A stretch of DNA of 64,000 nucleotides from Podarcis pityusensis (Eukaryota), in the NCBI GenBank assembly GCA_964106645.2, contig OZ067039.1. One strand, given 5' to 3'. Below, in pieces: positions 3,701-24,407 of this stretch (within the stretch, counting starts at the first letter, position 1; every line of letters starts with the position of its first letter). A program made the position numbers and the translations under genes. The notes under the pieces were generated by a model. That model did not search any database and was not told the DNA's origin. It worked only from the letters and a program-made list of their open reading frames with translations.

Positions 3701-6700
3701 ATGCTGTCAACTAGGAAGCTGCAGCCCTTGTGCAAAAGGAAAATGATAATAATAATGTGACAATTATGTTTGCTTATATTGGCTTGGTTCTGTGTGTTCA
3801 GCTTTAATAACGAAATTGTCTGAAAATATTTGACAAGGAAGGTATCTGTAGAAAAGAATAGGAAGAGAAGGCACTGCATGTATTTCCAAGTGTTTTCTAC
3901 AACTACTGATACTTATTCTTTCATCATACAGCAGTTTCCACATTACGTAATAAACTCACAGATGTGCAAGATATTCACTGCCTCACATGTCAGTGATTTT
4001 GATTGGTAAATGGAACAGTTATCATAGATTAGTCAAATAATTTAGCTTTGAATATTGACACATATTGACACCTTTTCCTCTTCCATTATAAGTGCTGCTA
4101 TTATATTTCATGAGAGCAGGGATTTTGGGGTGGCTTCAGAATGACAATGGGTCCTTGTATGCTGCCGTTAGACTGAGTTGTTATTCTTCGCATTTTGTTG
4201 TCCAGGGCTAAATATGCTGTTGGTGCAATAAAGAAGAAAGTCAACGACAAGAATCCACACGTGGCTCTCTACGCACTAGAGGTAAGCTAAAGTGAACACA
4301 ACTTCCTCAGGGTGTAGTCACTCTCCCAGGTCAATGAGAGAAGCTTTCTTTCCCTAACCTTGCGAGAGAGATGTGCAGCCAGCCCACTTTTTGTTCAAAG
4401 GAGGACCAGAACTTCTGCTGCTAATTACTTGTAACTAGGGCAACATTAAAAGGGGATTAGACAGATTCCTGGAGGATAAAGCTATCAGTACCTCCAATAC
4501 CAGAGGCGGTATGCCTCTCAGTATCAGTCCTCTGGGGGAAAACTGGGGGAAAGGGCTGTTGCATTTGTGTTTGTTGCTGGTGGTATTTCCAAGGACATCT
4601 GGTTGGCTACTGGGGTGAAACAGGATACTTGACTATATAGGCCTTTGGCCTGATTCAGCAGGGCACCTCTTTGAATATTTGGTCAGGGACAATGCATGCT
4701 CATGAATATATTTTCCTTGTAGGTCTTGGAATCTGTGGTAAAGAACTGTGGTCAAACAGTTCACGATGAAGTGGCTAACAAACAGACCATGGAGGAGTTG
4801 AAGGAATTGCTGAAGGTAGGAGCTTTTTGGCTGTTTCTCCTCCCCGTAAGCAGCTGTTTAAAGAAAAAGAAATCCAAATTTATAAACAGTGAAGCACCCT
4901 TATAGGCCAAACATAGAGTTCCTTTCCAGCAGGAGGAAATTTACAAGGAAAACCACTCTTTCTGTCCTTCCCACCCCTAGTAGAAGACGAATATACAGGT
5001 AGCGAGCAAAGAGAATAACTGAGGTTGGGTTTCTGATACTAGATGGCAAGGGGCATTGCTCCGAGCGTCATTTCCCAGTTAAATTGCGCTTACGCTGTTC
5101 CCTTGGAAGATTGTGGGTTCGTTTCCATTGGGCATATTGCCTGATCCTGGCTCTGCACATTTCTACAGAGACAAGTTGAAGCCAATGTTCGCAACAAGAT
5201 CCTGTACTTGATCCAGGCATGGGCTCATGCCTTCCGCAATGAACCCAAGTACAAGGTGGTGCAGGACACTTACCAGATCATGAAGGTTGAAGGTAAGGAT
5301 GAGTGACCTGTGCTGTGAAGAAGGGGGCGGGCAGGTGGGAAGACGGAGTATGTTCAGTTGGGGATCTGGAGAAAGCACACTGGTGCATTTGATTTAAGAA
5401 ACAGCAATGACCGGCTTCCATGTAGCATGTCAGTGTCTTAGGTATAAGCCCTAACGGAACACAGTAGCTTCCAGAGCCGAGAAGAATTCCTGTGATCTTT
5501 GTCACTTGTGATATTACGGTATGTTGGACTATGGGTCAGGCGGTTGGTTGGACTTCATTCTGGAAGGCCAATCTATGCCAATCGCTCTAGCCTCATCCCT
5601 TCAGTACCTTTGTGGGGATGTCATGTTTTCTTTGGCTGGGAAAGGGAACGTGGTGAGCAGGTGAATGGCTTGTGTGCATTTGTACACAGCTTCTCAGGTC
5701 TTTCACTTGGTGCCCCCATCCCAAGTACCAGCAGGTGCCAGTGGTTGAAGAGCCCAGCAGAGTGACATTGTTGATCTTCCTGCAGGTCACATTTTCCCAG
5801 AATTCAAGGAGAGTGATGCCATGTTTGCAGCAGAAAGGGTGAGTGTCCCAGTTGGGAAAGGGGCACGCCTCACATATGGAAATGATTTGGACTTTTTTGT
5901 GGTAATTATAACCTGTCTTGATACTTCTGTTGCTGAGTTTGGGCTGAATCAGTCTCCAGTGAAAATCCAGCTGCCTGGGGGTGGGTGATAGCAAAAATAG
6001 AACGTATCCCATTCGATTTGTACATTGTGGGCTGTGGGAAGTAAGAGAAGCTAATTGTGTTACTTACTTGCTTATCTCGTTTTTATAATGTTCTTCACAA
6101 CAGCATCCCAGGGTGGTTCACAAAAGGTAAAAAAATGTGCAGAACTAAAGCCAACATTAAAAGCAACAGCAGAAAGTAAATACTTCTAATAGATTGTTAC
6201 GGAATCAGATTGCTCATAACCCAGGGGTGCCCAAACTTATTTTTCAAAGAGGGCCAGATTTGATGAAGTGAACATGCACGAGGGCCGACCAGAATTGTTG
6301 AGCTTTTTTTAGAATTGAAGTTGCTGAGCTTTTTTTTAGGATTTTGCCCCGGGACATATACTGCCATGGTGCATTTTGAGCAACCAATGTAACTGAAGTA
6401 GGAAGGACACCTGGTAGATCTCCAGAGGCAGCGGAATTCCACATGGAGGGTGCCACAACTGAGAAGGCCCTCAAACGGGTCTCTCACACAACCACACCCT
6501 ACATACCAAGCACTACTCAGGGGTGGAACCACAAGAAGGGCCCCTTCCACAGATATTAGCTTGCAAGTGGCACACAATGAGTGAAGAACTCAAACATATA
6601 CTTGGGTCCCAAGTCATTTAGTGTAATATAAGCCAATATTAATACCTTGAAGTAGACTTGGAATCAAATAGCTAGCTGGTGCAGATCACAGAAAATTGAT

Positions 6701-9700
6701 GTAATGCGACTGTCTTTGCATCTCATTCAGTAAACAAGCAGCGGCATTCTACACTATCTGCAGCCTCCTAACCATCTTCTAGGGCAGCTCCACATAGAAT
6801 GCATTGCAGTAGTCTTAACTGTGAGGCTATCAGAGCATGGATCACTGACAAGAGTATCCCAAGAATGGCCAGCATTCCAGTTCGGGAAGAGAACCATCTA
6901 TTTAGTTTTTACTGCCTCTTTATGTTACACATGCATTTTCTCTATCTGGGATCCCTCCCCAAATACTGCTGCTCTTGGGGGTGCTTTTTTCGGGTTCTTA
7001 GGATCACTTCAAGGCTTTGTGACGGCCTTTTTGTTACCCAATACTTGCTTTGTTTCTGTGCGGCAGGCCCCAGACTGGGTGGACGCCGAGGAGTGTCACC
7101 GGTGCAGAGTCCAGTTTGGGGTGGTGACTCGTAAGGTGAGTGGTGCAGCTCCCTGTCCCGACCTGGAGCTCCTTTCCTGTGGCAGCTGACATGACACAGA
7201 GCCATGTTATAATGGCAGCAAGAGGAGGTGTGGCCGGGAGATTTAAATTCTAGTGGGCTTCTATTCTTGACCTCTCCCTGTGTTCGCAGCACCACTGCCG
7301 GGCTTGTGGGCAGATTTTCTGCGGGAAGTGCTCCTCCAAGTATTCCACCATTCCCAAGTTCGGCATAGAGAAGGAGGTGCGAGTGTGTGAGCCCTGCTAC
7401 GAGCATCTCAACAAGTAAGTATCGGAGCTCAGCTAATGAAGAGGGTCATTGGCACAGAAAGGTTGGGGAAGAATGAGGGGGTTTTTTGGCAGCCTTTCTT
7501 TCTACATGTGCATACTCTGGAGGGAGAGAGTTCTTATTCCTCGAACAGTAAACTGAATACAGTCGTACCTTGGTTCTTGAATGCCTTGGTACTCGTACGT
7601 TTTGGCTCCCGAATGCCGAAAACTCGGAAGTAAGTATTCTGGTTTTTGAATGTTTTTCAGAAGCCGAACGTCCAACACAGCTTCCGCTTGAGTGCAGGAA
7701 GCACCTGCAGCCAATAGGAAGCTGTGCCTTGGTTTTCAAACTGTTTCAGGAGTCGAACGGATTAAGTTCGAGAACCAAGGTTCCACTGTAGTCTGGCAAG
7801 TTGCAGCTTAAAGAGAAAGAGCTAATTGGCTTATTGCAGACCAACAGATGCTACAATAGAGCAGGTGTTGAGTGGTCCTCTCTTCCCCCCAAACCCCTGG
7901 CCGACCACCAGATTGCAGTTCAGCTGTGGTCATGATCCTGGCTTCTCTGTATACACAGGAAAGCAGAGGGGAAAGGAACTGCAACCACGGAGCTTCCTCC
8001 TGAGTACCTGACCAGCCCTCTTTCCCAGCAGTCCCAGGTGAGCACTTGGCTGTGATGGCAAGGGATGGGGCTCCACCTTCACCCGTCACCTCTTCACCCA
8101 GGTTACAGTGACTGCTGTTTCTTCTGCCCTCAGCTGCCTCCCAAGCGTGATGAAACTGCCCTGCAGGAGGAGGAGGAGCTGCAGCTGGCCATTGCACTCT
8201 CCCAGTCAGAGGCAGAGGAGAAGGAAAGGATGGTTTGTGTCTTGAGAATTAGGGGGGGATTCCTGTGACATTAATACTCGGAGGTACCCCGCAGGGTTGA
8301 CTGCCTTGTAGCGCCCAAAGAGCTTAGGTAGCTCAGTGTTCTGCATAAACTCCTTTCCCTGCAACAGCCTAGTCCTCAAATATGGGAAACTTGTGCTGAT
8401 GTCGTCTCCCCCCTGCCAAAATGAGGCATTTTAATTGTTGGGTACTTTGCCAATCGGGTGTTTGTAACTACCAGAAGCGATTCCGGAAAACATACACGTT
8501 ATGTCGTGTTCAGTTAATTAAAATGCTGCACTAACTTTCCCATTTTGTTGTCTAATTAAGAGCAGATAAAGACCATGCTGATTCTGGGTGAATCTAATTT
8601 CATCACTAACAGCACACTTATTTGTGCCATTCTGAGATGCCCAGACGTGGCTGGTAACTGTCAGGAGGCATGCTTCATGCTTCATTCCCAATCAGCTTCT
8701 GGCTTGCTGGCTGACTGCAAAAGTGGTTCCTGGCTTGCTGTGCAAGTTCAGGAATCGGTGAAGCATCCCTATATCGTTCTCCCTCTTGCTTTTCCTCTGC
8801 AGAGACAGAAAAGCACGTATTCCACATACCCCAAGGCTGAGCCGACACCAGTCACCTCATCGGCTCCACCAGTCAACACCCTCTATTCCTCACCTGTGGT
8901 AAGTGCCCACCCACCTGGAGAGATTTCCCCTTTTGCCATTTAGACACTTCTCCCGTGTCATGAACATTCTGTGGTTCTTTGGTAAGTCCAACAGTGTCCA
9001 TGGGAGAGGAAGAGAATGGGTGTTGGCTTTTCCTGTCACCTTGCTTCAGCAGCTCCTTCTGCTCACGAGTCCCCTCATGCCTTGAAGCTTGAAACAGGCA
9101 TCGTTTCAAGCTTGATCTCCTAAGGGAAGGGGAGGCAGTGGGGGTACTCATCTTTGCATGTGTCTTGTAATATGTGTCTTATTTCAGAACTCCTCTGCAC
9201 CTCTGGCCGAGGACATTGACCCTGAGGTAAGACCCCCCCATCCCCATATGCCATTTTGTAGTTTGCTGGTATCAGTGGCACCCTGGCTAGTGACAACCAG
9301 CTTGCTTCCTGTTTCCCAACATCTCCTTGCAGTTGGCTCGGTACCTGAACCGCAACTACTGGGAGAAGAAGCAGGAGGAGGTGCGCAAGAGCCCCACCCC
9401 TTCCGCCCCGCTATCCATGGGGGAGCCAGCAACCCAGAACACCGAGGTCCAGCCTGCCCCGCTCAGTGTGGTGGAGGTAAGAGCAGCCTTCCCTTTCTGT
9501 GTGCTCTTAGGATGCTCCACAGTAAGGCAGAATTAGGCTCAGCTGCTGGGTTTGTTTGGTTTTTTCCTGAAATGGTTGCCAGCTGGTGAGCAACTGCTGT
9601 TTCTTTCTCCAATGTGAGCAGTGGGATTAAAGGAGGCCGGGCACGGAGTGCAGCAAGCTTTCTGTGCTGCATTTGAACAGTCTGGAGGTTTAAGGTTTTT

Positions 9701-12700
9701 ACAGGAGATGCATCGCCTTGCAGGGAAACAGGACAGGGGTAACCCAAGGCAGCTGAAGCCACATTGAAAAATGAACTCGGTTGAGCTTTAACTTAGTTGG
9801 AATTGCGGCTTCCAGTTAATGGTCTCCCCATCTCTCTCTGATGGTCTCCCCAGCAGCAATACCAAAACGGCGAGACAGACGAGAGCCACGACCAGTTCCT
9901 GAAGGCTCTGCAGAACGCCGTCACCACCTTCGTCAACCGCATGAAGAGCAACCACCTGCGGGGCCGGAGCATCACCAATGACTCCGCCGTGCTCTCGCTC
10001 TTCCAGTCCATCAACAGCATGCACCCTCAGCTCCTGGAGCTGCTGAACCAGTTGGATGAGCGCCGCCGTAAGTTCCCAGGGCCCCGGCCCTTAATGTGGG
10101 CAGAGACCTGCGGGAGGAGCTTGTAGCACGGTTGGGATCACCTCTCTCCCCATTAAATCATAGGCGGTTAATTGACTTCCTTGCGTTGAACCAAAATGGG
10201 CATTGGGGCTTCCTTTCCACTTTTTAGCATTGGGGTGGGAAGGAAGGGAAGATGGTGTGATGCCTTTGGCCCACGCTGAGGAGTCTGCCCTGCTTTCCTT
10301 GAGGTGAGAGCTATAATATAATATTTTTATTATTTATACCCAGCCCATCTGGCTGGGTTTTCCCAGCCACTCTGGGTGGCTTCCAACAGAACACTAAAAT
10401 AAAATAACTATTAAACATTAAAAGCTTCCCTAAACAGGGCTGCCTTCAGATGTCTTCTAAAAGTCTGGTAGTTGTTTTTTCTCTTTGACATCTGGTGGGA
10501 GGGCCTTCCACAGGGAGGGCACCACTACTGAGAAGGCCCTCTGCCTGGTTCCCTGTAACTTGGCTTCTCACAGCGAGGAACCGCCAGAAGGCCCTCGGCG
10601 CTGGACCTCAGTGCTATACCTCCTGTGGATCTCATGGAGGTGGGGCTTCTGACTACGCCTTTTTTCACCCCTTCCCCCTGCCCAGTGTACTATGAAGGAC
10701 TTCAAGATAAACTTGCCCAGATCCGGGATGCGCGGGGAGCCCTGAATGCTCTGCGGGAGGAACACAGGGAGAAGCTGCGCCGCGCTGCCGAGGAGGCCGA
10801 GCGCCAGCGCCAGATCCAGCTAGCCCAGAAGCTTGAGATTATGCGGCAGAAGAAACAGGTGAGGTGGCCGCTGCCAAGTGTGTCCGGTACAAAAGGTACA
10901 CCTGCCCTCCGCAAAATGGTTTGCAAGCGGTGCAGCCTAGTAAAGCATGAAGCCCCATGGCTCCCGTGTTGTAACACATCCCATGTGCTTCTCCAACTTG
11001 TAGGAATACCTGGAGATGCAACGGCAGTTGGCGATCCAGCGCCTTCAGGAGCAAGAGAAGGAGCGCCAGCTGCGGCTGGAGCAGCAGAAGCAAACGATCC
11101 AAATGCGGGCCCAGATGCCTGCTTTCTCCTTGCCGTATGCTCAGGTATGACGGGTGGAGAGGCCGAGAATCCCTCCTCCTCTTCCCTTCCATGGCTGTTC
11201 TCTTTGCAAATACATCAGCCAAGTCACCGTCCCTCTCTTAACCTGCTTCCTGTCTCTCTAGCTGCAGGCCATGCCTCCTGCTGGCGGGGTGATCTACCAG
11301 CCATCAGGCCCCACAAGCTTCCCAGGCACCTTCAGCCCAGCAGGCTCTGTGGAGGGCTCACCTATGCACACAGTGTACATGAGCCAGCCTGCCCAGGGCA
11401 GCACTGGACCATACACTGCAATGCCTGTGGCAGGAACAGGTAAGAGCAATAGGATGGAGGGGGAATGTGTTAGCTGAAAGCACCTGAAACGGGATACCGG
11501 GTCTCGGAAGGCTGTCCTTTTCTCATATTTCATCTGTATTTCAGATCCCAACATGGTGAGCACCTACATATACTCAGCAAGCACTAATAATGCCCAGGCA
11601 GCTCCGCAAGGGCAGGCTGTGCCCACCACGAATCCTGCCTATTCTTCCTACCAACCTACACCTACCCAAGGCTACCAGGCAAGTTTGACCCACAGCCCAA
11701 ATTTCCTCTGCCCCAAATCAGGGGATTAAATCCCAGCAGATTATATGTGCTGTTGTGAAAGTGGAGGGGGGAGAGTTCAAGCCAGTGTGGTGATGTCATT
11801 AGTGTTTGACTAGGACAGAGAAAATCCAAGTTTGAATCATTCTAGCGGTGATGCTTCTGTTATTATGAAGTTGAAGCACCTGTTTTAAACCATTTTCAGA
11901 AGGGTAGCCAAGTTAAGTCTGTTGCAGCAAAAATAACGGAGCCTTGTGGCCACATAAAAGACAAAAAAATAATAATCATTTCATCAGCTTCAACGGACTA
12001 CAGTCCAGTTCATCTCATTATGCGTGTTGTGGTTCAAGCATTTGGATTTGGACCTGGGAATTCCAGGTTCAAGTCTTCCCATAGCCATCAAGCACAGTGC
12101 AAGTAGCAAGCTCTCCGTCTTACCTATAGCACCTATGTGAATACAGTGGAGAGGACTGTACATGCCGCCTTGATCTGCTTGGAGGAAGAGTGGAATATAA
12201 ATAGTCTTTGCCAGCTTGCAAGTAGCAAAAGTTTCTCCCTGTGTTCTTGCCTGTGTGTTGAAGTTTGTCAGGACTTCTCACCCATTCCTGCCTCCTTTAC
12301 CTTGCAGAACGCAGCTGCCCCTTCCCAGACCCAGGCGATCCCAGCCATGACACAAGCGCCGCAGGGTTACATGGGCAATCAGTCGGTCTCCATGGGCTAC
12401 CAGCCCTACAATATGCAGGTGAGAGACTCCTTGAAACTGTTGCGCTGTGCGCCTTCTCCAGTGTCCGGTGTGAGGGCAGCCAGCAGACAGGACTGAAGGG
12501 GAATTCTTGTATGTGCATAGAGGCAGCAAAGCCACCCCTAAGCTTCAGGCTGCCTCCTGTTATGAATGGAGCCATGTGGATTGGCGGAAAGTCTTATGCC
12601 CTCTTCTTTTCCTGTTAGAACCTCATGTCAACCCTCCCTGGACAGGAACAGGGTTTGAGTAACCTGCCACCCCAGCAGCCTTACCTGTCAGGACAGCAGC

Positions 12701-13051
12701 CTATGTATCAGCAGGTGAGTCTTCGACCAGCCACTTTGGGGGCAACTGTTTTGGCGACTTCTTCATGTCATGTTAGGCTGATGCCCTGAATTCCTTCAGC
12801 CCAACATTGTTTGGCTTTTTAGCCTCTGTGCCAATCCATGGGTTGGAGGACCATTACTACAGTAGCTTTAAATGGGGGAGGAGGATGCCTTTTTAAACAA
12901 GACCTCCTTACTCGCTTCCCTGTTTGCCTCCTTACAGATGGCGCCTCCTGGAGGACCTCAGCAGCAGCAGCAGCAGCCTCAGCAGGCTCCAGTCCAGGTG
13001 CAACAGGCACAAGGCGGCAGCGGAGAGGCTCAGCTGATCTCCTTTGACTAA
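776..13051 (+). CDS. HGS: Hepatocyte growth factor-regulated tyrosine kinase substrate (Hrs, ESCRT-0), 21 coding exons, 759 aa
   Basis: join(776..812,2620..2704,4206..4281,4723..4815,5169..5292,5786..5838,7067..7135,7290..7414,7959..8037,8134..8232,8803..8898,9188..9226,9333..9476,9854..10067,10686..10858,11004..11144,11262..11439,11545..11678,12308..12418,12619..12714,12938..13051) = 2280 nt with all phases consistent. Contains VHS (MGRGGGTFERLLDKATSQLLLETDW), FYVE (APDWVDAEECHRC...RKHHCRACG), UIM (LQEEEELQLAIALSQSEAEE), PSAP, the coiled coil and a C-terminal clathrin box (LISFD). All introns are GT-AG except one GC-AG. Confidence 0.98.
7560..7788. mobile_element. Tc1/mariner (Tigger-like) MITE in HGS intron 8
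   Basis: TA-CAGTCGTACCTTGGTTCT...AGAACCAAGGTTCCACTG-TA: terminal inverted repeats (TIRs) and a TA target duplication. Confidence 0.8.
10322..10617 (-). mobile_element. LINE 3' fragment (L2/CR1 clade). A near-identical copy is at 37372-37673; older relatives are at about 6060-6870 and 51930-52420.
   Basis: The block TTTATACCC..CCCATCTGGCTGGG..CTTCAGATGTCTTCTAAAAGTC..GAGAAGGCCCTCTG..CCTGTAAC is shared by 10322-10617 and 37372-37673, with a (TTA)-rich tail. Confidence 0.65.
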
Positions 13052-13786: not shown

Positions 13787-14088
13787 GTATTTAAAACTTT
13801 TTTCAGTCTGTGCTTCCTCGTAGGCCTTGGGTTAAAAGTTTCTGTCTCTGCAGAACTAGTTGGTGGGTTGTGACCACCGGTGTATGCAAGGTCTTAGAAG
13901 GGGGTACAGGAGGCATTCGTCATCCTGGGGCAGCGCAGAGAATAGAATTTCTTAAAGCCATTCTGAAAACGTTATTGCCCCCTCCCCCAAAGAAGCTGCA
14001 GAAGCATCCATTTCTTTTTCTTAATTTAATTTCCACACCCATCCATATAAATAGGGCAGTCTTCCTTTGACTTTTCCGTAGCCAGAGA

Positions 14089-17000
14089 TCATAACTCCCT
14101 CCGCCGAAAGATCAAACATTTGGTGTATTCAGGCATCTCCAGCTGAGGAAGAAAAATAGGCACTGAGTATTGCATCAGGGAGGATGAGCAAAATGGAAGC
14201 CTATGGGAGAAACTGCAGAGCTGGTGGGATCCCCATTCCCAGGAAACAAAAGAGCAAGAGTGGGAAGTGGTGGTTGTGGTTTCTGCAGTTCTATTTCATT
14301 GCCCCCTACAACGTTGTAGGCTGACCTCAGCCTCTTACCATGCGCTCGAGCCGGAGTGCATTAGTGTTTGCCAGTTGACGAAGCTCCTCCACATCTCTCA
14401 GTCCCCACTCAGGATTTCTGCCATTTTAAGAGCATAATGTGTTAAAAGTAGAACATGGCCTCGTCACAACGAAATCCTTAGACCCTTTCCCAAAGAAGGA
14501 GAAACAGTAGGCTAAAGGCTAAACACGGTCTCTGCCTGTAGCTCGTCTTCATCATGTAACACAAAATCTTGCCCTGTTGTCCATCTTCCATGCTACTACA
14601 CAACATGTAAATAGTGAGGAAATAAATCAAGGGGAAATTTCCAAGTAGCCTTTCCCCATCCTGCCTTGACCTCACTAGGCCTTTGGTGGTCACCACAAGG
14701 GAGATGAGATGGAATCCTGTCCTTCAGCTCTAACATACCTGGCCTGGAGCATGTTATCCAGTTGCACATTGCACTCTGGGAGGATGATCCCATTAACGGC
14801 GAACGGCTGTGGAGTGGAAGCAGAGGGAATTAACACCGGGCCAGCATTCTATGGGGCTCTTAGGGCAAAGGTCTAGAACGAAGGCAACAAACCTAACATC
14901 AGTGACCCTTGAGCAAGCCCCATTGAATTCAGTAGGATTTGCTTCTGAGGAGGCGTTGTGCTGTAAGACTCATGAGCACGTTTGCGGAAGAGCAAGAAGT
15001 CTTGTGGCAGAACTGGATCAAAATATGAGCTGCTTTCCAACCTTGAGGTTCTCCTTTTCCATCAAGTTGGTGGTGGTGGATACTGCTTAGAGCTGGGCTT
15101 GGGTGCACAAAACTCTTACGCATCCGAGCAAAGCAATAAGCAGAAGCACTCGGCCTTCCTATTGGCTGATGTGGAGGGAGAGTGATCAATTCAAAGGCTC
15201 CCAACAACAAGCTGGTGGTCAGGCACTTTGAGAGCTGCACAAATCAAGACTTCTAGCAAGCCCCACCCATACCTAGATGTAATGAAATATGACCTTGCAG
15301 GTCAGATGGGGAATCCTGGCAAAGCGGACTTTGCCTGTGATTGCCTTCCCACTGAGCTTAAGCTGTAATGGATGGTTTTCCTATACTCACCCCGTAGGCC
15401 AAGCAAATGCCTCCAGGTTTCAGCAGTTGTCCTATGCCTTTAAACATTCCCTGTAACGCAAAAGGTTATCTGTTGAATAAGATCCTTTGCAGAGGTCAGT
15501 TTCCATAATATTGACCTAAGTGCTTTGTCATACCTCCAGGCCTTGATCAGTCATGTGCAGCAGGTTAATAATAATGATGAAGTCACAACAGCCTTGACTC
15601 AAGCCAGCCCACTGGTCCCATGGCTGTGTTACATCTATGGCAAGGGGTTCTCGGACATTGGTCACCTTGGTGGCTTGGATGTAAGCAGAGATGCTGTGGG
15701 AAAAGATGGAAGATTCTTATTTTTGTGTGTAAAGCCATAATAAAAAAAGGGGAGAGTTACTTTCTCCAGTTTCCTTCATCCTGGCCCCACAAAAAAAGCA
15801 GCACTGGCTTTGAAATACAGTCAGGTAATATAGTAGGATGCTAGTGGGAAATGTATGTAACTTCTTTCTCTGAACCAGAGAAAGGCTAGACAAGGGTATG
15901 ATATATGCATCCAACATTGATTCTCCAAGTTAAAGGGGTGGACACATTTTTATGATTTTTCCAAGTGACAGTGCTAAGATTTCAGATGTGACTGCTCTGT
16001 GAATTATGGTCAGTGTAAATGACACAGGCACTCAATTACATGTGTATGTGACGCTAGCGACAAGCAATACAGCACACTGGCACAATCTCCCATGCCATTT
16101 TATGCCCTTCAGTTTCTGTCCTCATCCCTCCCAACACCTCTTGGTGAGCAATGACTATTAGAAATGTTATTGCTATTTGAAAAGGAATACCCCACACAAC
16201 ACCCTCTTTACTCCATCTGTTGACTTAAGCTGTTTGCGCCAGATGATTTTTGCACAGGCCAAGATGCCACCTACGAAATGCTGTTACAATTTTATCCTCA
16301 CCCTTGTGCATGTTTTGCAAATTGTAAATTTCAGGAATAGCTAACAATAAAATAAAATGTAATGAAGGAACGTCTGGAAAACCCCTTGGACGCTTGCCAA
16401 CCATTTGTTCATGTTTGTCATACCACATCTCAAAAAAGAAATTCCTCATTTCTCATACTGTAATATTAACTGTAGTATTAACCATGATAATTTTAATCTA
16501 CCAACAACCCACAGACCCAGGCTAAGTAGTCAAAGCAACACCAGGTATTAAAGCCAAGTTTTTAAAAAATGCATCTACCTTGGCATATACTGTTTTATTG
16601 CCAGATTATTCTATAGTCTAAGACAGATTGCCACCAAGAAGTTCTCACTATTCCGCTGAAATATACACATGCCGTTACTGCTTCAGCAGCAAGTCTTTCT
16701 TACCAAGAATATATGCACAGCTAGGATCTGTCCAATGCAGAACAGTCTAGCTATTTCTTGGAAAGGCATTTCCAGGCTACTGAACACAAGCTGCCATATG
16801 GTTTTTGACAGTCCCTTTTGGTTGACTATAAACAAGGACTAAGAGCCAGTTCTTTTTAGTGCAGATTTTGTGCCAACATTCTGCTGGGGCCAAGGGAAAG
16901 CATGGTCCACACACTACTACAACACCCATCCCTTGCTGTCACCACAGGCCCCAGTATACCTCTGTTGAGAAGCTGGGCTGATCTCTGAGGGTTGCCAGAT

Positions 17001-17153
17001 GACCGTGGGCAAGGCCTGGGCAAAGTGCACCACATGCTGTCCTGTGCCAGATCCCAGTTCAAGCCCAAAAGCTGATCTTGTGTCATCCACATAGTCAGCC
17101 AGCACCTCAAGGATGGTTTCCTTGTTTCTCTCAGCCATCGGCGAAACTAGCAT
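14089..17153 (-). CDS. METTL26-like: METTL26-like (DUF938/UPF0585) SAM-dependent methyltransferase paralogue, 6 coding exons, 204 aa
   Basis: complement join(16960..17153,15534..15693,15391..15450,14739..14806,14339..14417,14089..14142) = 615 nt, all GT-AG, phases 2,0,0,2,0, no stops. Protein: MLVSPMAERNKETILEVLADYVDDTRSAFGLELGSGTGQHVVHFAQALPTVIWQPSEISPASQQSISAYIQATKVTNVREPLAIDVTQPWDQWAGLSQGCCDFIIIINLLHMTDQGLEGMFKGIGQLLKPGGICLAYGPFAVNGIILPECNVQLDNMLQARNPEWGLRDVEELRQLANTNALRLERMLEMPEYTKCLIFRRREL*. The motifs AERNK, LELGSGTGQH (SAM motif I), WQPS, INxxH, YGP and NPEWGLRD are characteristic of METTL26. Confidence 0.93.
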
Positions 17154-18429
17154 CTTTTCTGGAGATAGGCTCTGTTCTCTTCTCCCGGGATTTCTGTTTG
17201 CTTTCTGATATCTCCAGCCCTACAATGATGCCCTAAGCTAGATTTATTAAGGCAAAGGAGATTACACTAAGATGCACTTGGCTACAGCAGGAAAAGCACG
17301 TGTTGCCCTTGCACCTGCAGCTCAGACAATCCTGCTGAAAGATTCAACACAATGTTTTCACGGGGATATTTTGTACAGACCTCTGAGCTGCATGTCTGCT
17401 TCATACACCTGATGATCTATTCTACAAAGTAGGCTGATCAAATACTCATCATGCTGCAATAAGATGGTTGCCTTTTAAGGGGTCACAGAGTCCTGTTGTT
17501 TTTATTCAGAAACATGTTGTCTTTGGGATCTTGTTTCTGTTGGATTTTTTGTTAGATTTTATTTATATGCAAATGCAATACAGTAATACATAACTTTAAC
17601 AGCATTACTATATAAGATCACTTTTGTCTAGGAGTTTGTTTCATGAGCTATTAAGATCAGTGCCAGCTATCGGTACTAGGCTGGCTGCAATATTCCTGAA
17701 TCAGGAATGTGTTCTAAATCAACAGTGCTGAGACTTGCGGCCATCACTCACTGTATAAGAGGTCAAGAAATGGAACTGCTGAAACTAAAAAGTACAACTT
17801 CATTTTATTGTGAAGGATCAAATTAATACATGCTTGTCTAAAGAAAAAGGTTTTAGCAGGCATTGAAAAACAATACAAATCAGTATGAGCTCTGCTGTGG
17901 GGCTTCTGGTGTGCAGCAGCTTTCCCCACTGAGTTCTTCATTTGTGGTGTCTGATGGGCAAGTCTGTTTCTAAAAACTTTCAGTTCTTATCAGCATTGGC
18001 TAAAATCAAACTAATGCAAATCCTTGTCTCTGCATCTCTCCCACACAAAAAGCCCTTTGTTTCAAGAAGGCAGACTGGATGAAACACAAAGCTAATTCTG
18101 GATCCAAGCCAAGTTAGACTGTACATCTTTGTGTTCTGTAAATATCCAGCACGCTGGTATATATCAAATTACAAAAAAGTAGTCAGGACCAATTCTGTAC
18201 ATCACCAAAATCTTTTTGGGAATTATTGTTTACTCAGAAGTAGGTCCCACTGAATCCAACAGGGCTTGCTCCCAAGTGTTTCAAGGCTGCAGCCTTAGCT
18301 TAATTATCAGCTTTGTAAACAAACCCTGTGATTTGCTAGGCCGAATTTTAATTGTCAGCAGCCCCAGCGCCGTGCTGTTAATATGTGCACTTGGCAATAT
18401 CAAATTATGCCTTCCCAGCTTTTGAATCC

Positions 18430-18914
18430 CACCGGTCTCCTTGCTAAACGAATCAAACAACCACCTCTGTAGAGCTCAGTGGCACGTTCCGGGAACACCA
18501 TTTTGCACACATTTTACAATTTACACCGCCTCCATTCCACAGGCTCCAAACGCTCCTTCCTCTTCCCGCGCAAAGAAAACACGCTCCCAAAGCCCGCGCG
18601 ACGTCCGCCGTTGCTAACAAACGCGTCTGCCGCCGCCGCCGCGCGCAGCAACGCCTGCCATAGAGTCTTCATCCCTAGCGCGGCATTGTGTAAGGGTGGG
18701 AAGCGGCCCGAACGTCACCTCCGTCAACCACGGAGATGCACAGCGGGCCGCCTAGAGCGCCATCGATCAAACTCGGCCGCGATAGGTGCACCCCGCTGGA
18801 TCAGAGAGAAGGAGCGGGCAGAGCGTTCCCTCGGCGTCCTCTGCCGCTCGCACGCCGGAGACAGAGGAGAGCGCCGGTGTGTCTCCGTCCTGCCCGCCTC
18901 CTGGAGCTGCCGCC
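18430..18914. promoter_or_regulatory. CpG-island promoter of MRPL12, probably shared divergently with the METTL26-like gene
   Basis: CpG-rich from about 18480 to 19220. The METTL26-like ATG is preceded by an acceptor (TGTAG| at 17220/17219, minus strand), implying an upstream exon toward this island. An X-box-like GTTGCTAACAAAC lies at 18610-18622. Confidence 0.6.
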
Positions 18915-21900
18915 ATGGCCATGTTGCCCGCGGGCCGGCTCGGGACCGCTATCCGCCTGCTGCTGCGGTATGCAAGAGGCGGGAGGTGGGCTGGGCGGTT
19001 CCGAGGGGCCCGAAAGAGGTCGAGGTTAGGCGAGTTCACGTGCCAGAATCCCATCGGAATCCCGCCTTTCCCGCGTGAGGGATGAGGCGCCCACGCGCGC
19101 TTTTTCCGCCGTGAAATGTTCAAAGCTGTTTCGGGTGCTTCCCGTTTGGTGGTGCCCGCAACAGCTCTGAAAGGTGGGCCGCCCTCGCTAACCCCAAATC
19201 ACCATCGAGGGCGCGAAGCTGGTGGTGGCAAGTTTGCCAAAGGCCGACCTGCTGGTTTTTATGGCTGAGGCGAGACTTAAAACCAAAACTTCCTGCTTCC
19301 TGGCTCCTGCTTTTAGTCAATAGGCAAGGAGTGGGTAGGAGCTTAAAACTGATGGAAGGGGTTCCCAATGGTCATCTAGTCCAACTCCCTGCAACACCAA
19401 GAGAAGGTCAGCCACTGGCCAGTTTCTGCTGGACAGCCTAGGGCTATCTCTGCAGATGTCCCCCTCCCCTTTGTTCTCAATATCCAGTTTCTAGTCACAA
19501 ACAGCAAGTTTGAGAAATAGTCCGGGTAGAAACGGAAGATAGAAGCTGTGAACTGTCTGGACTGTTTTTGACAAAAAATGGTAGATTAGTTGGCTCTTGA
19601 TTTGTTCCAAGGTAATTTTTATGTTTATAAGTAAGAAGGCACATTTGAAGTTACTTAAGCCCTACTAGGATATGAATATACATTCTTGCTTTGTGGAGCA
19701 GAGGACTTCCTTTTTGAAAATTAGAGTAGACCGTGCAAGATTGAAGTCAGTCCACCCTGCTCATCACCTGCTCTGGTGACAACTATCTGCTCTGAGTTAT
19801 CCCACTGTGGAGCTCACAGTGCAAAAACAAATTTATCTACACCTCACATTGGAAAACACTTCAAGCTTTTAAAAATGCCTTTTAGTAATATGGACATTCT
19901 GAAGGAAATCAGCCCTGAGTGCTCACTGGAAGGACAGATCATGAAGCTGAGGCTCCAATACTTTGGCCACCTTATGAGAAGAGAGGACTCCCTGGAAAAG
20001 ACCCTGATGTTGGGAAAGATTGAGGGCACAAGGAGAAGGGGACGACAGAGGACGAGATGGTTGGATAGTGTTCTCAAAACTACGAACATGAGTTTGACCA
20101 AACTGCGGGAGGCAGTGGAAGACAGGAGTGCCTGGCGTGCTTTGGTCCATGGGGTCACGAAGAGTCGGACACGACTAAACAACAACAATATGGACATCTC
20201 CTTAATTATTATTTTTTTAAATTACAGTTTTGTTGGTGCTGAGAGGTGTTGCTTCTCCCCCTTTTCCACAGCACCTACACCAATCCATGTTTATATCACC
20301 CTTTCTTCTCACTTGGGTGGCCTTGCTGTTTCTCCTGAAGCACATCTGTTCTCATTCTTTCATTCATTTGCTGCTTGCACAGGTCTTTATGTTGTGAACC
20401 ATGATGTGCTGACAAACTCTTTGTTGATTTTTCTACAGGCAGCATCAGCCACGAGCATGTGCTATTAGGATGCTGAAGACTACCAGCTCACAGCGAAGTG
20501 AAGTCTTGGCAACTCCGCCTCTTGATAATGTTCCCAAGGAGTACTCACCCAAGATTCAGCAGCTAGTTCAAGACATTGCCAGCCTCACCCTACTGGAGAT
20601 TTCTGACCTCAATGAACTACTGAAGGTGCCAGTGTTTGCATGGGAAGCAGGGTGATTGCTGTACTAGGGAAAGATGGAGCAGCAGACAGCTCATTGTTGG
20701 TCATGTATTTCTCTGGGATGGGGTGCTTTGGAATTCCTTCCCCAGTTTTTGTGATGCATACAATATAGAAGGAGGATTAATATTTCTCTTAACACTGCTT
20801 ACTCTGTCTTTTTCTTCAGAAAACCCTCAAGATCCAAGATATGGGACTCATGCCAATGGCTGGGATGATGCCACCAGCACAAGCAGCAGCTCCAGTAAGG
20901 GATCGATTGTTTAACTTGTTGTTTATTTGGGCTGAGTAGCAGCTGTAGCTGGGCAAATGTCTGAATGGAAAACTTCAGCAGCCCTACAAATGAGCATTCT
21001 GTTGAGAGCATTGTGTGTGAAGGCACCAAAATATTACATAACAGGCATGTTGATTGCTTGAGGCTGCTGGACTAAGCATGCAGCCAGCCTGTTGTTGCCC
21101 TGCATTTAACAGTGGCTTTTGAAGCAGAAAGAGAAGCAGTTCTGCTGCACTGTCATGGAAAAGGTTGTTTCAGTGTTGCTAACTCGTCAGATGACATTTT
21201 CCTGGATATTACTGGTGTATAACAAACTCAGCAACTGGAGATGGGAATGCAGGGGTGAGAAAAGTTCTCTGCTAATAGGGGCTTACTTTGTGGTTGTGCT
21301 TGGTATCGCAGTCGTCTTGCCACATTTATTTATTTACATACCCTGTCTTATGAACTCTTAAGAAATAAGATGTTCAGAACCAAAATACCATTTACTGTAT
21401 ATAAAAGCCACACAAAGCCGTTAAGCTATCTAAAGAGTAAATAGCACTAACACCAGTGCAGTGGTCCTGCCACTTATGTGAGGTTTAGTTCCAGGGGTCC
21501 ATGTGTAAAGGCAAAATCATGAGTAGTCTGTCCCTGAAAAAGAGGGTGCCATTGCATCACATATTTTCAGGCCACTGCAACAATTTAAATCTAGCACATG
21601 ATGTGTTGGGCCTGCAATAACCAAGGATAACCCTGTCATTATTGTGGACATCACAAAGACCTGAGCTGCAGGTGATAGGGAAGCCTGGACATGGATGTTA
21701 AACCCTTTACCTAAGATTGGGCAGATAGTTGTAATAACTCTCACTGCAGTTGACATCTCAGGGCTGATACTGCATCAAGAATCAAGTTGGGAGCTGTTGG
21801 ATCAAAACAGGTCGGCTCGAATTATGCACTGAGTTCTTAGTTCTATATTCCTGGTCAGTAGCGTTCACTAGAATTAAATACTCAGTGGTAGATGTTTTGT

Positions 21901-24407
21901 TGACAGTTGATTTGGCATTAATGCGTTGCCCCTTGGCCCCTCACACACGCACAAACAAATCCCGCTGCAGCCAACCAAAGACAGTCAACCACATCCTAGG
22001 CCACCCCAGCCTCTCACACCACCAAGGAAACATAACAAGCGAATAGAAAGAGATCCTGTCCAAGTGACGCTGAAACAACCCCCCTCCCCCGCGCACACGC
22101 TATCTCAAAGAACATGCACTTTACCATCCCACCCCCCCCTCTCCCATCCCCTCCCTCTTTTCTTCCCAATATAAGTTGCCCCTTGGGGCCACACCTTTCT
22201 GTGACCCATTCCCCTTATTAAGATTTTCTAAGTACCATGTCAAGACAGTCTTTATAGTAGCTCTGTTTTGAGATCATCTTCCCATCCCAAAAAATGCAGG
22301 GATTTACGTAAACTGCATGCAAACACTTCCAAAGATGCAGGCAAGTGCTCCTTAAATGTGAAGATTTCCACATCAAAGTCTCCTTTCTCAAAGGAGGTTA
22401 CTTATACAACATTATGATACTTCTCCCTTGTAGCCTTAGATCAGCGTTTGCCAACCTGGTGCCCTCCAGATGTCTTCGACTACAACTGCCATCTGGAGCT
22501 GTAGTCCAAAACATCTGGACAGCAGCAGGTTAGTGAAAATTGCCTGCTTGTATTACACTGGTTAAGATCTTGAGCATTTGTGGAGCAGATGAAATGTCCA
22601 TTTGGCCCGCCACCTATTTCCCATTGTGGACAATCAGAAGTTTCTGCTCCATATGCTGGGCCTTTCAAGTCAATAACAATTCGCCTGCTATTACTTCCAG
22701 TAACTGATTAGATATGCTCATTGGGCCACTTCCAGTAATAAAAAGCTGGTGTTCAGTTAAGGCAAGGCTTTTGGGCTGACCTACTGTCTCTATTCCTTCA
22801 TCATTAAAGGAGAACTAGCATAGATGGTGAGGTGTTTTAATCTTCTTTCTAGTTTACTGTTGATTTTGATCAACTCTTAAATGTTTTAACTACTTGCTTC
22901 TAACTTTTCATTGATGGTTTTCATTTCTTGTAAACCGCATAACGGTTTTGTTGCAGTCAAGTGCTATATACATTATGGTTAAATAAAAATAAAGATTCAG
23001 CAATGGTCTTGCAGCCCAACACAAGAATTTAGGGGAAATAATGAAGGAGTAGCTGGTGCAAGTTTTGTTAGATCTTCCCTCTGTATTTGGTACTTTGGTA
23101 CTACCATTGGCTAATGAAACTTCAGGGATGTGAGGGTCAGGCTCCTGTTGCCAATTGTGAGTGGGTTTTTATCTTTTTTGCTAGGAAGCTGAAGAGGATT
23201 TTGTCCCCAAGAAGCCGGAGAAGATAAATTTTACAGTCAAGTTGACTGAATTGAATGCTGCAGATAAGGTGAAACTTATCAAGGAGGTGAAGAATTGTAT
23301 GCAAGGCTTAAACCTTGTCCAGGTAAGCAGATGGTGCTCAAGGCTGACTTAACAGGTGAATGTGCTAAAGGCTTGAGGGAGGCAAGTTTCCTTTTACTTG
23401 TGCCATACAGAACTTAATTATCAAGTAGCCCCATCTACTTGGGCTACTGTTGTGCATTTAATGGTGGTGTAAGTACCTCCTTGCTCTCTGCCTCTTGTCT
23501 GATATATCCACAAGAGGTCTGCAGTCAGTACTTAGGGCAAATGCACATTTTGCTTGACCTGTACTTTGATTGTATTGTGTACCAATTTATTCCCCTGGGT
23601 CCGGGAGCTTTTCTTTTTCTGTGGCTGTGCCTTCCGAAAATCTGATCCTACCTGCTGAATTAAAGCTCCATTAAGCAAAATCTCTCTTTGGATTTTCTGC
23701 ACATCCATCAAAAAAGATCTGATTCAGTGGGAAAGATCAAATTTTCACAAGGCACAGTTGCAGAACAATGAGGAAAGCCCTGGGACCTTTAATCAGTACA
23801 CGGTAATCAGGGGAAATGAATCAGTACACAATACAGGTCAGGTGAAGAGTGGATGAGCCCTTGGTCATACCACCTGGGGGCAGCAAATTACAAAGAGATG
23901 AGCTGCCAAAGGAACGTTCACATGAGGAAAGTGAGGAGGTAATGCGGAGTTAGTGGAAGCGAATTTGCATCCTTTGAGATAGTACCAGCTAGTGTGGCAA
24001 GTCCCTTACAAATCATGATGCTCCAAAGAGGATTCTTCTAAGCATTTGGACTCTGGTCAGAAATGGCTTACTGTTTCTTGCCAGGAACTTGGCCAGCTGA
24101 AAAGTAATACTGCCGCTTCAGCCTAGGAAATGCTTCTGCTTGGCTCATCTTCTAGGCTGTGTAATCTGCCAAGTGGGGAGATAGGGGCGAAGTCACAGAG
24201 GGTCCCATACTAGTGGGAGCAGGCAGCAGCAGCTTCTTGGGTTCAGCGTTATCCCTTTCCGTGGCTAACTGGCTCTCTTATCTCTTGCAGGCGAAAAAGT
24301 TGGTAGAGTCTCTTCCTCAAGAGATCAAGGCACACGTCTCTAAAGAGGAAGCGGAGAAAATCAAAGCTGCTCTGGAGGCAGCAGGAGGGACTGTCGTTCT
24401 GGAGTAA
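18915..24407 (+). CDS. MRPL12: Mitochondrial ribosomal protein L12 (bL12m), 5 coding exons, about 189 aa
   Basis: join(18915..18967,20439..20625,20820..20894,23185..23322,24291..24407). An Arg-rich presequence is followed by [36 protein letters not shown] ... [60 protein letters not shown]. The exon 1 donor at 18967 has a same-phase alternative at 19024. Confidence 0.96.
19898..20186 (+). mobile_element. BovB (RTE clade) LINE, 5'-truncated, in MRPL12 intron 1
   Basis: Encodes [58 protein letters not shown], the BovB ORF C-terminus. It has a (CAA)n tail and an 11-bp TSD AATATGGACAT (19887-19897 and 20187-20197). Confidence 0.92.

What the first reader, a model, noticed from the sequence alone, without database searches (positions are those of the whole stretch)
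14089..17219. Hidden intact METTL26 paralogue between HGS and MRPL12, probably a whole-genome-duplication copy lost from the human locus
Seen in sequence: six minus-strand exons, of which only the first appears in the ORF track, splice with perfect GT-AG phases into a stop-free 204-aa DUF938/METTL26 protein. Established: human HGS and MRPL12 are adjacent with no gene between them. Human METTL26 is on 16p13.3 beside RAB40C and MCRIP2, whose paralogues RAB40B and MCRIP1 are on 17q25.3, and MCRIP1 follows GCGR. Inference: this gene is the 2R sister copy of METTL26, kept in reptiles and lost from this locus in human. It would be an essentially uncharacterised enzyme.
Basis: partly seen in the sequence, partly recalled or inferred. 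Interest (0 to 1): 0.8.

Follow-up and report, generated by a model that had tools for sequence, protein, structure and literature searches.

The report
Annotated METTL26B gene, not hidden
The six exons are real and encode an intact methyltransferase, but it is the already-annotated vertebrate gene METTL26B (an ancient sister of METTL26 that mammals lack), so the finding is correct and ordinary.

Summary
Six minus-strand exons (17153-16960, 15693-15534, 15450-15391, 14806-14739, 14417-14339, 14142-14089), all GT-AG, give a stop-free 204-aa DUF938 protein.

It is not hidden. The protein is 100% identical to RefSeq XP_028571584.1, "methyltransferase-like 26 B isoform X1" of Podarcis muralis. NCBI gives that name to the gene in turtles, lizards, lungfish and ray-finned fishes. 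The same clade also holds coelacanth and chimaera proteins (UniRef: zgc:103625).

The evolutionary reading is supported:
- Podarcis also has METTL26 proper, on another chromosome beside a WFIKKN-type gene.
- In a 63-protein tree the 26B clade (100/99) and the METTL26 clade (95/81) each hold cartilaginous and bony vertebrates.
- Turtle, bowfin and milkfish keep the order SLC25A10-MRPL12-26B-HGS.
- No 26B protein from mammals, birds, crocodilians, amphibians, snakes or tuatara appeared among annotated hits. This was not tested on DNA.

The gene is under strong purifying selection (dN/dS 0.06-0.10) and keeps all 33 family-conserved residues. RNA contigs and reads confirm junctions 2-3, 3-4, 4-5 and 5-6.

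Two corrections. In the four runs laid, transcripts skipped the ATG exon. The substrate is unknown, and no paper names the gene.

The parts
18465..18672 (-). Upstream 5' exon of the gene (the mapped part; the true start lies further upstream, close to the MRPL12 start). It has two donors, after 18518 and after 18465. In this window the ORF from ATG 18672 is closed by TAA before the 18465 donor.
   Evidence: The N-terminus of P. muralis isoform X2 (P0167) maps to 18672-18520, and that of the P. lilfordi 293-aa model to 18672-18465. The sequence was read. Loose ends of X23 raw reads joined to exon 15693 match 18467-18490. In P. muralis the MRPL12 and 26B gene ranges start 243 nt apart, head to head.
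16960..17219 (-). Acceptor AG at 17221-17220, ATG at 17153, donor GT at 16959-16958. It encodes residues 1-64 and two bases of codon 65, including SAM-binding motif I (LELGSGTGQH).
   Evidence: DUF938, E=2e-17; the P. lilfordi model splices in at 17219. dN/dS is 0.03 and 0.07 against two other squamates. Its junction to 15693 was not seen in 4 runs.
15534..15693 (-).
   Evidence: The junction 15533/15449 was seen in contigs of X1 and X4 and in one X23 read.
15391..15450 (-). It is skipped in the 184-aa isoforms of Varanus and Sceloporus.
   Evidence: junction 15391/14806 in X1, X4 and 2 X22 reads; 20-residue gap in P0162 and P0163.
14739..14806 (-).
   Evidence: junction 14739/14417 in X1 and X4 contigs.
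14339..14417 (-).
   Evidence: junction 14339/14142 in X1 and X4 contigs and 2 X23 reads.
14042..14142 (-). Last exon: 17 codons, TGA at 14091-14089, and a short 3' UTR to about 14042-14054.
   Evidence: The spliced contigs end at 14042 (X1) and 14054 (X4). A turtle ORF matches 100% over 18 aa.
5138..12728 (+). Neighbour: HGS exons. The gene converges tail to tail on the 26B gene.
   Evidence: Pfam Hrs_helical at 10625-11440. Exon matches are collinear with the HGS genes of Emys and Amia.
20437..24404 (+). Neighbour: MRPL12 exons 2 onward. Its first exon lies near 18.9 kb, head to head with the 26B 5' exon; that position was read by eye and not tested.
   Evidence: Collinear matches to the Ribosomal_L12 genes of Emys and Amia.
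30916..31041 (+). Neighbour: first matched exon of the mitochondrial carrier gene (SLC25A10 position).
   Evidence: Pfam Mito_carr. It matches the Mito_carr genes of Emys and Amia.

Best explanation
This is the wall-lizard orthologue of METTL26B (zebrafish zgc:103625). It is a single-domain, about 200-residue class I (Rossmann-fold) S-adenosylmethionine-dependent methyltransferase of the DUF938 family.

It is the ancient sister of METTL26. The two arose by a duplication before jawed vertebrates diverged, most likely as part of the early vertebrate genome duplications. METTL26 stayed beside WFIKKN1/MCRIP2. METTL26B stayed between HGS and MRPL12.

METTL26B survives in chimaera, ray-finned fishes, coelacanth, lungfish, turtles and lizards. 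It appears to have been lost in mammals and several other tetrapod groups.

Shown here: gene structure, identity to the RefSeq protein, clade membership, synteny, purifying selection, retention of all family-conserved residues, the predicted fold, and splicing of exons 2 to 6.

Inferred: it binds SAM through motif I (E32, G36, G38, H40) and transfers a methyl group to an unknown acceptor. It has no targeting peptide and no extra domain. Its nearest solved folds are small-molecule O-, N- and C-methyltransferases. My best guess is therefore a cytosolic enzyme acting on a small molecule or a peptide end. Its acceptor preference may be shifted from METTL26 by two clade-fixed changes at otherwise invariant positions (F154L, A192E).

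Transcription starts at a promoter shared head to head with MRPL12. Inclusion of the ATG exon decides whether the catalytic protein is made.
For: - Structure and family.
- Identity to XP_028571584.1 / CAI5765866.1.
- Naming across vertebrates.
- Trees: 26B clade 100/100; vertebrates 95/83, 26B 100/99, METTL26 95/81, each clade with cartilaginous fishes.
- Synteny SLC25A10-MRPL12-26B-HGS in Emys, Amia, Chanos and P. muralis. Collinear with the window.
- METTL26 proper lies beside FAM195 and a WFIKKN-type gene in a python, and beside a WFIKKN-type gene in P. raffonei. P. muralis METTL26 is XP_028561617.1.
- All six exons are intact with AG/GT in two other squamate contigs. dN/dS is 0.062 and 0.098.
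- All 33 columns conserved at 90% or more are kept, and only two positions are diagnostic.
- AlphaFold2 model of the 90%-identical gecko orthologue: pLDDT 95.5, pTM 0.91. Foldseek best hits are SAM methyltransferases, TM 0.7-0.79, E about 1e-12.
- Four exon junctions were seen in contigs of two organisms and in raw RNA-seq reads. All 8 raw reads had the first mate on +, which fits a minus-strand RNA if the libraries are stranded.
Against: - The ATG-exon to exon-2 junction (16960/15693) was not seen in any of the four runs.
- Depth over the ATG exon (1.3-3.6) is no higher than over the introns, while exons 2-6 stand at 27-30 (X1) and 7.2 (X4).
- The reads that cross the 5' edge of exon 2 continue into the upstream 5' exon or another alternative exon. 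In those samples most mRNAs therefore would not encode the SAM-binding part.
- No enzymatic activity or substrate is known for any DUF938 protein. METTL26 was still called functionally unknown in 2021 and 2026 (PMC8662637, PMC13707005).
- There is no solved DUF938 structure.
- '2R' rests partly on my own knowledge of the 16p13.3/17q25 paralogy. No cyclostome or amphioxus sequence was in the tree.
- The chimaera sits beside ray-finned fishes rather than at the base of its clade, on a long branch of 0.58.
Confidence: 0.9

Rival explanations
1. The duplication is ancient but was a small-scale (segmental or tandem-then-moved) event before jawed vertebrates, not a product of the 2R genome duplications.
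For: The trees date the split only to before the cartilaginous-bony fish divergence and after the sampled invertebrates. On the 26B side I did not verify any paralogous neighbour pair. The FAM195 exons of the python locus gave no match in the window at E<=0.01.
Against: METTL26 lies beside FAM195 (the MCRIP2 position) and a WFIKKN-type gene. From established knowledge, human 16p13.3 and 17q25 share many paralogue pairs (MCRIP2/MCRIP1, RAB40C/RAB40B, ARHGDIG/ARHGDIA, PDIA2/P4HB, METRN/METRNL). This is my own knowledge and was not tested here. Both loci keep stable microsynteny from ray-finned fishes to reptiles.
Confidence: 0.2
2. In Podarcis the locus is mainly a source of non-catalytic or non-coding transcripts. 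RNAs start at the MRPL12 bidirectional promoter and skip the ATG/SAM-motif exon, so the 204-aa enzyme is rarely made.
For:: there is no 16960/15693 junction, and ATG-exon depth is at intron level in two organisms. Three X23 reads and four contigs leave exon 2 for other upstream sequence. That sequence maps to the 5' exon donor at 18465 and resembles the P. muralis isoform X3 exon. RefSeq lists isoforms X2 (191 aa) and X3 (174 aa), which lack residues 1-65.
Against: The ATG exon is intact. Its dN/dS is 0.03-0.07 against other squamates. It is 100% identical in protein among three Podarcis annotations and differs at 2 residues over the whole protein from Zootoca. Only four runs of unknown tissue were laid, and contigs drop rare variants. 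RefSeq and the P. lilfordi annotation both model the inclusion form.
Confidence: 0.15
3. It is the only METTL26 of this genome, simply moved to a new place.
For: None found.
Against: P. muralis, P. raffonei, P. lilfordi, Zootoca and Lacerta each have a separate 207-aa METTL26 on a chromosome of about 52-56 Mb, while 26B sits on one of about 123-127 Mb. The METTL26 locus lies beside a WFIKKN-type gene. The window protein is about 50% identical to METTL26 and sits in the other clade at 100/99.
Confidence: 0.01
4. It is a reptile-specific duplicate or retrocopy of METTL26.
For: None found.
Against: It has five coding-region introns, with the same exon lengths in other squamates. Orthologues sit at the same HGS-MRPL12 position in bowfin and milkfish. 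The clade includes chimaera, coelacanth and lungfish.
Confidence: 0.01

Closest known systems
METTL26B / 'methyltransferase-like 26 B' (RefSeq XP_028571584.1 Podarcis muralis; zebrafish zgc:103625; formerly 'UPF0585 protein C16orf13 homolog B')
   Same: The protein is identical over 204 of 204 residues. It has the same exon structure, the same position between HGS and MRPL12 and the same clade.
   Different: Nothing at the protein level. The window DNA is about 96% identical to the P. muralis locus, so it comes from a congener. That species lacks an intact copy of the isoform X3 alternative exon.
METTL26 (human C16orf13, 16p13.3), DUF938 family
   Same: Same Pfam family and length, same predicted class I fold, and all 33 family-conserved residues shared. 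Function is unknown for both (PMC8662637, PMC13707005).
   Different: About 50% identity. It forms a separate clade that split before jawed vertebrates diverged, and it lies in a different locus (WFIKKN-type and FAM195 neighbours). Two otherwise invariant positions differ: F154 to L, and A192 to E in the MPANN motif, which reads MPEYT here. METTL26 is present in mammals and birds; 26B was not found there.
Bacterial and invertebrate DUF938 proteins (e.g. Cupriavidus metallidurans DUF938 protein)
   Same: About 40% identity over the full length, with the same single-domain architecture.
   Different: They carry F154 and A192 like METTL26. No function has been shown for them either.
Small-molecule SAM-dependent methyltransferases with solved structures (e.g. 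3mcz, MfnG 7ux6, DnrK 1tw2, CysG 9fd3, CurJ C-MT 5thy)
   Same: Rossmann-like methyltransferase core. TM-score 0.7-0.79 normalised to the query, Foldseek E about 1e-12. Weak profile matches, E 1e-4 to 1e-2.
   Different: Only 12-21% identity. Most have extra dimerisation or cap domains that this 204-aa protein lacks. They are fold relatives, not family members, so they do not identify the substrate.

Membership tests
DUF938 (PF06080) / METTL26 family | Full-length match to the Pfam PF06080 profile | tested here: met
   Exons 1-5 hit profile positions 3-188 of 202 in order. The identical protein P0269 carries PF06080 in the precomputed table.
DUF938 (PF06080) / METTL26 family | Family-conserved residues, including SAM-binding motif I (E-x-G-S-G-x-G-Q-H) | tested here: met
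   All 33 columns conserved at 90% or more across 52 family members are kept in the model: E32, G36, G38, H40, F44, W53-Q-P-S56, D85, N108, Y137-G-P, N151, G166, D169, M190-P191 and others.
Class I SAM-dependent methyltransferases | Seven-stranded Rossmann-like fold | tested here: met
   Tested by proxy. The AlphaFold2 model of the 90%-identical gecko orthologue P0153 has pLDDT 95.5 and alternating strands and helices. The top 500 Foldseek hits were all at E<=0.001, and those listed are SAM methyltransferases.
Class I SAM-dependent methyltransferases | SAM binding and methyl transfer | not testable with these tools
No DUF938 member has a published activity (PMC8662637, PMC13707005).
METTL26B orthologue group | Falls in the 26B clade, not the METTL26 clade | tested here: met
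   Clade support is 100/100 and 100/99. It is sister to Zootoca 26B.
METTL26B orthologue group | Lies between HGS and MRPL12, head to head with MRPL12 | tested here: met
   Window. Emys, Amia, Chanos and P. muralis.
METTL26B orthologue group | Clade-diagnostic residues L154 and E192 | tested here: met
   L154 is in 19 of 19 and E192 in 18 of 19 26B proteins, and both are in the model. METTL26 has F (14 of 14) and A (12 of 14). Outgroups have F (19 of 19) and A (17 of 19).
2R ohnologue pair (METTL26 / METTL26B) | Duplication after the invertebrate split and before the jawed-vertebrate radiation | tested here: met
   Both clades hold cartilaginous and bony vertebrates. The vertebrate sequences form one group at 95/83 against six outgroups. 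The outgroup branches are long.
2R ohnologue pair (METTL26 / METTL26B) | Both genes lie in paralogous blocks that share other ohnologue pairs | tested here: inconclusive
   On the METTL26 side, FAM195 and WFIKKN-type neighbours were seen. On the 26B side, MCRIP1 and RAB40B were not verified in the window, and one attempt found nothing. The rest rests on recalled human map positions.
2R ohnologue pair (METTL26 / METTL26B) | Single copy in amphioxus and tunicates; cyclostome copies that fit 1R/2R | not tested
   No such sequences were identified among the named hits.

The most novel reading that the evidence does not exclude
METTL26B is not just a spare METTL26. Two clade-fixed replacements at positions that are invariant from bacteria to mammals (F154L; A192E in the MPANN hairpin) may have given it a different methyl acceptor. 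Its output may be gated by optional inclusion of the SAM-motif exon from a promoter shared with MRPL12. Repeated loss (mammals, archosaurs, amphibians, snakes, tuatara) would then mark a dispensable, lineage-dependent metabolic or modification step that has never been studied.
Probability: 0.15. Interest if true: 0.35.

Novelty: already known. Interest (0 to 1): 0.15.

Why it matters
Little is new here. The gene, its exact protein and its 'B' paralogue name are already in RefSeq and UniProt-derived records for dozens of species.

What remains useful is a short list of facts that no paper states; a full-text search for mettl26b, 'zgc 103625' and 'methyltransferase-like 26 B' found none:
- The A/B split predates jawed vertebrates.
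- The B copy keeps a fixed place between HGS and MRPL12 from ray-finned fishes to reptiles.
- It seems to have been lost several times in tetrapods, including in mammals.
- It differs from METTL26 at two otherwise invariant residues.

For anyone trying to find what DUF938/METTL26 enzymes do, zebrafish or lizard METTL26B offers a natural second family member for comparison. It also warns that knocking out one gene in fish may be buffered by the other.

Tried and rejected
- **Joined model.** I never typed or sent the joined 204-aa protein to a database tool. It was assembled only inside run_python from window.fa, for local BLAST and tree 1. It was replaced by the identical stored protein P0269 once that was found.
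- **Solved structures.** PDB by sequence with exon 1 found nothing. PDB with a 52-sequence profile found only weak generic methyltransferase matches.
- **Loose ends.** A fuzzy-regex search for the loose-end letters timed out and was redone with BLAST and ungapped scans. The X1 and X4 loose-end consensus strings (agreement 0.62) match nothing in the window. They match only 19-20 of 30 letters at the P. muralis isoform X3 exon, so that assignment is tentative.
- **Exact look-ups.** The look-up of encoding contigs had no record for P0167, P0166 or P0011. The 10-kb flanks around Heteronotia METTL26 reached no informative neighbour.
- **MCRIP1.** I tried to confirm MCRIP1 (FAM195) in the window using the python FAM195 exons. 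There was no hit at E<=0.01.
- **Rejected readings.** Translocated single-copy METTL26, reptile-specific duplicate or retrocopy, and pseudogene.
- **Not possible here.** TBLASTN of the HGS-MRPL12 interval in mammals and birds, because there is no vertebrate genome collection. I used no human sequence.
Full report
**What is in the sequence**

- The six minus-strand exons are 17153-16960, 15693-15534, 15450-15391, 14806-14739, 14417-14339 and 14142-14089.
- Each intron starts with GT and ends with AG.
- The phases are compatible. The total is 615 nt: 204 codons, a TGA, and no internal stop.
- The window has no N.

Exons 1-5 each hit Pfam PF06080 (DUF938) in order along the profile, at positions 3-60, 65-113, 120-139, 140-161 and 163-188 of 202. 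Exon 1 scored E=2e-17. Exon 6 (17 aa) is below the tool's minimum, but a turtle ORF matches it 100% over 18 aa.

I did not send the joined protein to any database tool. It was put together only inside scripts from window.fa, for local comparison.

**It is an annotated gene**

A search of protein representatives with exon 1 found a full-length turtle protein, P0006. It is 81% identical to the model over all 204 residues, without gaps.

A word search with that protein returned a long series named 'methyltransferase-like 26 B':
- turtles;
- lizards (geckos, a tegu, anguid, agamid, anole, varanid and lacertid);
- lungfish, bichir, sturgeon, bowfin and many teleosts.

The gar entry carries both that NCBI name and the UniRef name zgc:103625. 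The coelacanth entry is named only zgc:103625 (UniRef). The chimaera carries both names, under separate entries. These fall in the same clade.

Cluster look-ups and a residue-by-residue comparison show three things:
- The model is identical to P0269. That protein is XP_028571584.1, 'methyltransferase-like 26 B isoform X1 [Podarcis muralis]', and the same sequence is filed as CAI5765866.1 of P. lilfordi.
- It differs at two residues from the P. raffonei protein, and at two from the Zootoca protein.
- The window DNA is about 96% identical to the P. muralis locus, so the window comes from a close relative of that species.

'Hidden' is therefore true only of an ORF track.

**Is it a paralogue of METTL26?**

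- **A second gene exists.** A search with a gecko METTL26 lists METTL26 proper in mammals, birds, snakes, turtles, tuatara, amphibians, coelacanth, ray-finned fishes, sharks and rays. It also lists it in Podarcis raffonei. The same cluster holds P. muralis XP_028561617.1, P. lilfordi, Zootoca and Lacerta.
- **The two genes sit in different places.** METTL26 lies on a chromosome of about 52-56 Mb and 26B on one of about 123-127 Mb. In P. raffonei METTL26 is next to a WAP/Ig/Kunitz/NTR gene, the WFIKKN type. In a python it lies between a FAM195 gene (the MCRIP2 position) and the same WFIKKN-type gene.
- **The tree separates them.** In a 63-protein maximum-likelihood tree the vertebrate sequences form one group (95/83). 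That group splits into a 26B clade (100/99) and a METTL26 clade (95/81). The 26B clade holds chimaera, ray-finned fishes, coelacanth, lungfish, turtle and lizards, with the window protein beside Zootoca. The METTL26 clade holds five sharks and rays, ray-finned fishes, coelacanth, amphibians, mammals, birds, turtles, tuatara, lizards and snakes. A first tree with 50 rows agreed.

The duplication therefore predates the split of cartilaginous and bony vertebrates.

**Position**

The window reads HGS (+, exons 5138-12728), then 26B (-), then MRPL12 (+, exons from 20437), then a mitochondrial carrier gene (+, from 30916). The same order, SLC25A10-type carrier, MRPL12, 26B, HGS, is found in the turtle Emys, the bowfin Amia, the teleost Chanos and P. 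muralis. The location is thus ancestral at least for bony vertebrates, and it is not a reptile novelty.

Whether the duplication was part of 2R is likely but not shown. I sampled no cyclostome or amphioxus. I did not confirm MCRIP1 or RAB40B near this locus, and one attempt failed. The wider 16p13.3/17q25 paralogy is from my own knowledge.

**Who lacks it**

Among the best 120 hits of the turtle 26B query there is no protein from mammals, birds, crocodilians, amphibians, snakes or tuatara. All of these except crocodilians show METTL26. A 26B orthologue from any of them should rank above the fish ones that are listed.

This points to several independent losses. It rests on annotation only, because I could not search vertebrate genome DNA.

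**Is it a working gene?**

- Two genomic contigs from other squamates (L006, L007) carry all six exons at the same lengths, with AG and GT at every boundary. The introns have diverged beyond alignment.
- Nei-Gojobori dN/dS against the window is 0.062 and 0.098 overall. For the ATG exon alone it is 0.029 and 0.068.
- In an alignment of 52 DUF938 proteins from bacteria to mammals, the model keeps all 33 columns conserved at 90% or more. These include motif I, E32-x-x-S35-G36-x-G38-Q39-H40.
- Only two positions separate the clades at otherwise fixed sites. F154 (in all METTL26 and outgroup rows) is L in all 26B. A192 of the MPANN motif is E in 26B.

**Fold**

An AlphaFold2 model of the 90%-identical gecko orthologue is confident (pLDDT 95.5, pTM 0.91). 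Foldseek places it among class I SAM-dependent methyltransferases that act on small molecules (3mcz, MfnG, DnrK, CysG, CurJ C-MT; TM 0.7-0.79, 12-21% identity).

No DUF938 structure is solved. METTL26 itself was still described as of unknown substrate in 2021 and October 2026 (PMC8662637, PMC13707005). No paper in the library names METTL26B or zgc:103625.

**RNA**

I laid two contig sets (organisms A and B) and two raw RNA-seq runs (organism B) on 13900-17400.

Four junctions were found exactly as predicted, in contigs of both organisms:
- 14142/14339
- 14417/14739
- 14806/15391
- 15449/15533

Three of these were also seen in raw reads: 14142/14339 (2 reads in X23), 14806/15391 (2 reads in X22) and 15449/15533 (1 read in X23).

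All eight raw reads had the first mate on the + strand. That fits a minus-strand RNA if the libraries are stranded.

The junction 16960/15693 was not seen.
- Depth over the ATG exon (1.3-3.6) equals intron depth. Exons 2-6 stand at 27-30 (X1) and 7.2 (X4).
- The contigs stop at the 5' edge of exon 2, as expected at a branch point in the assembly graph.
- The loose ends there lead elsewhere. The X23 reads continue into sequence that maps to 18467-18490, at a donor after 18465. The X1 and X4 contigs continue into sequence that resembles, weakly (19-20 of 30 letters), the alternative exon of P. muralis isoform X3.

**True gene structure**

The N-termini of other annotated Podarcis products explain this pattern.
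- There is a 5' exon beside the MRPL12 start. It carries an ATG at 18672 and has donors after 18518 and after 18465.
- The P. lilfordi 293-aa model splices the 18465 donor to an acceptor at 17221-17220.
- In this window the upstream ORF ends in TAA before 18465. That exon is then untranslated, and the ATG at 17153 starts the 204-aa protein.
- P. muralis isoform X2 (191 aa) joins the 18518 donor directly to exon 2. Isoform X3 (174 aa) uses another exon whose 3' end is missing from this window.
- Both isoforms lack residues 1-65 and hence motif I.

In P. muralis the MRPL12 and 26B gene ranges start 243 nt apart, head to head.

In the samples I saw, the skipping forms dominate. Given the strong constraint on the ATG exon, I read this as tissue-dependent or unproductive splicing rather than decay of the gene. 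This remains open.

**Verdict**

The finding is accurate and its evolutionary reading is sound. It rediscovers an annotated gene whose paralogue status is already reflected in its database name.

Best explanation (confidence about 0.9): it is the Podarcis orthologue of METTL26B, an intact, constrained, single-domain SAM-dependent methyltransferase of unknown substrate. It is an early-vertebrate sister of METTL26, retained at the HGS-MRPL12 locus and absent from mammals. A 2R origin specifically has a confidence of about 0.7.

Novelty: already known. Interest: low.

Noticed in passing
window 15693-18672 (-): In all four RNA runs laid, transcripts enter exon 2 from upstream exons other than the ATG exon. 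The ATG exon (17219-16960) has only intron-level depth, so the SAM-motif exon is mostly skipped in those samples.
   Followed up: partly
window 17880-17924; L008 6732-6842: The alternative exon of P. muralis isoform X3 is only partly present in the window. A roughly 40-nt indel at about 17880 removes its 3' end and donor, so this isoform is probably species-specific.
   Followed up: partly
window 17227-17265; L001 9871-9909: A 39-nt stretch just upstream of the acceptor of the ATG exon is 85% identical between the lizard window and the turtle Emys, although the surrounding non-coding DNA does not align. It may be a conserved splicing or promoter element.
   Followed up: no
cluster of P0151 (turtle 26B proteins): Several turtle 26B products are filed under wrong names: 'ADP-ribosylation factor-like protein 16 isoform X1-X6' in Mauremys reevesii and M. 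mutica, and 'transferrin receptor protein 1' in Platysternon. ARL16 is a neighbour of HGS in human (from my own knowledge), so these may be merged gene models.
   Followed up: no
hit lists: No 26B-clade protein from snakes, tuatara, birds, crocodilians, amphibians or mammals appears. All of these except crocodilians show METTL26. This suggests several independent losses within tetrapods, including one inside squamates.
   Followed up: partly
model residues 154 and 192 (window exons 14806-14739 and 14142-14089): F154 and A192 are fixed from bacteria to mammals in DUF938. They are L and E throughout the 26B clade. Residue 154 lies in the helix after invariant N151. Residue 192 lies in the hairpin between the last two strands.
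   Followed up: partly
P0162, P0163 (Varanus, Sceloporus 184-aa isoforms): These annotated isoforms lack exactly 20 residues, which corresponds to the 60-nt exon 15450-15391. Skipping that in-frame exon seems to recur in lizards.
   Followed up: no
Chanos chanos record of 23,837,493 nt (P0173, P0208): The METTL26 and METTL26B proteins of the milkfish are both reported from a record of the same length, so they may be on the same chromosome.
   Followed up: no
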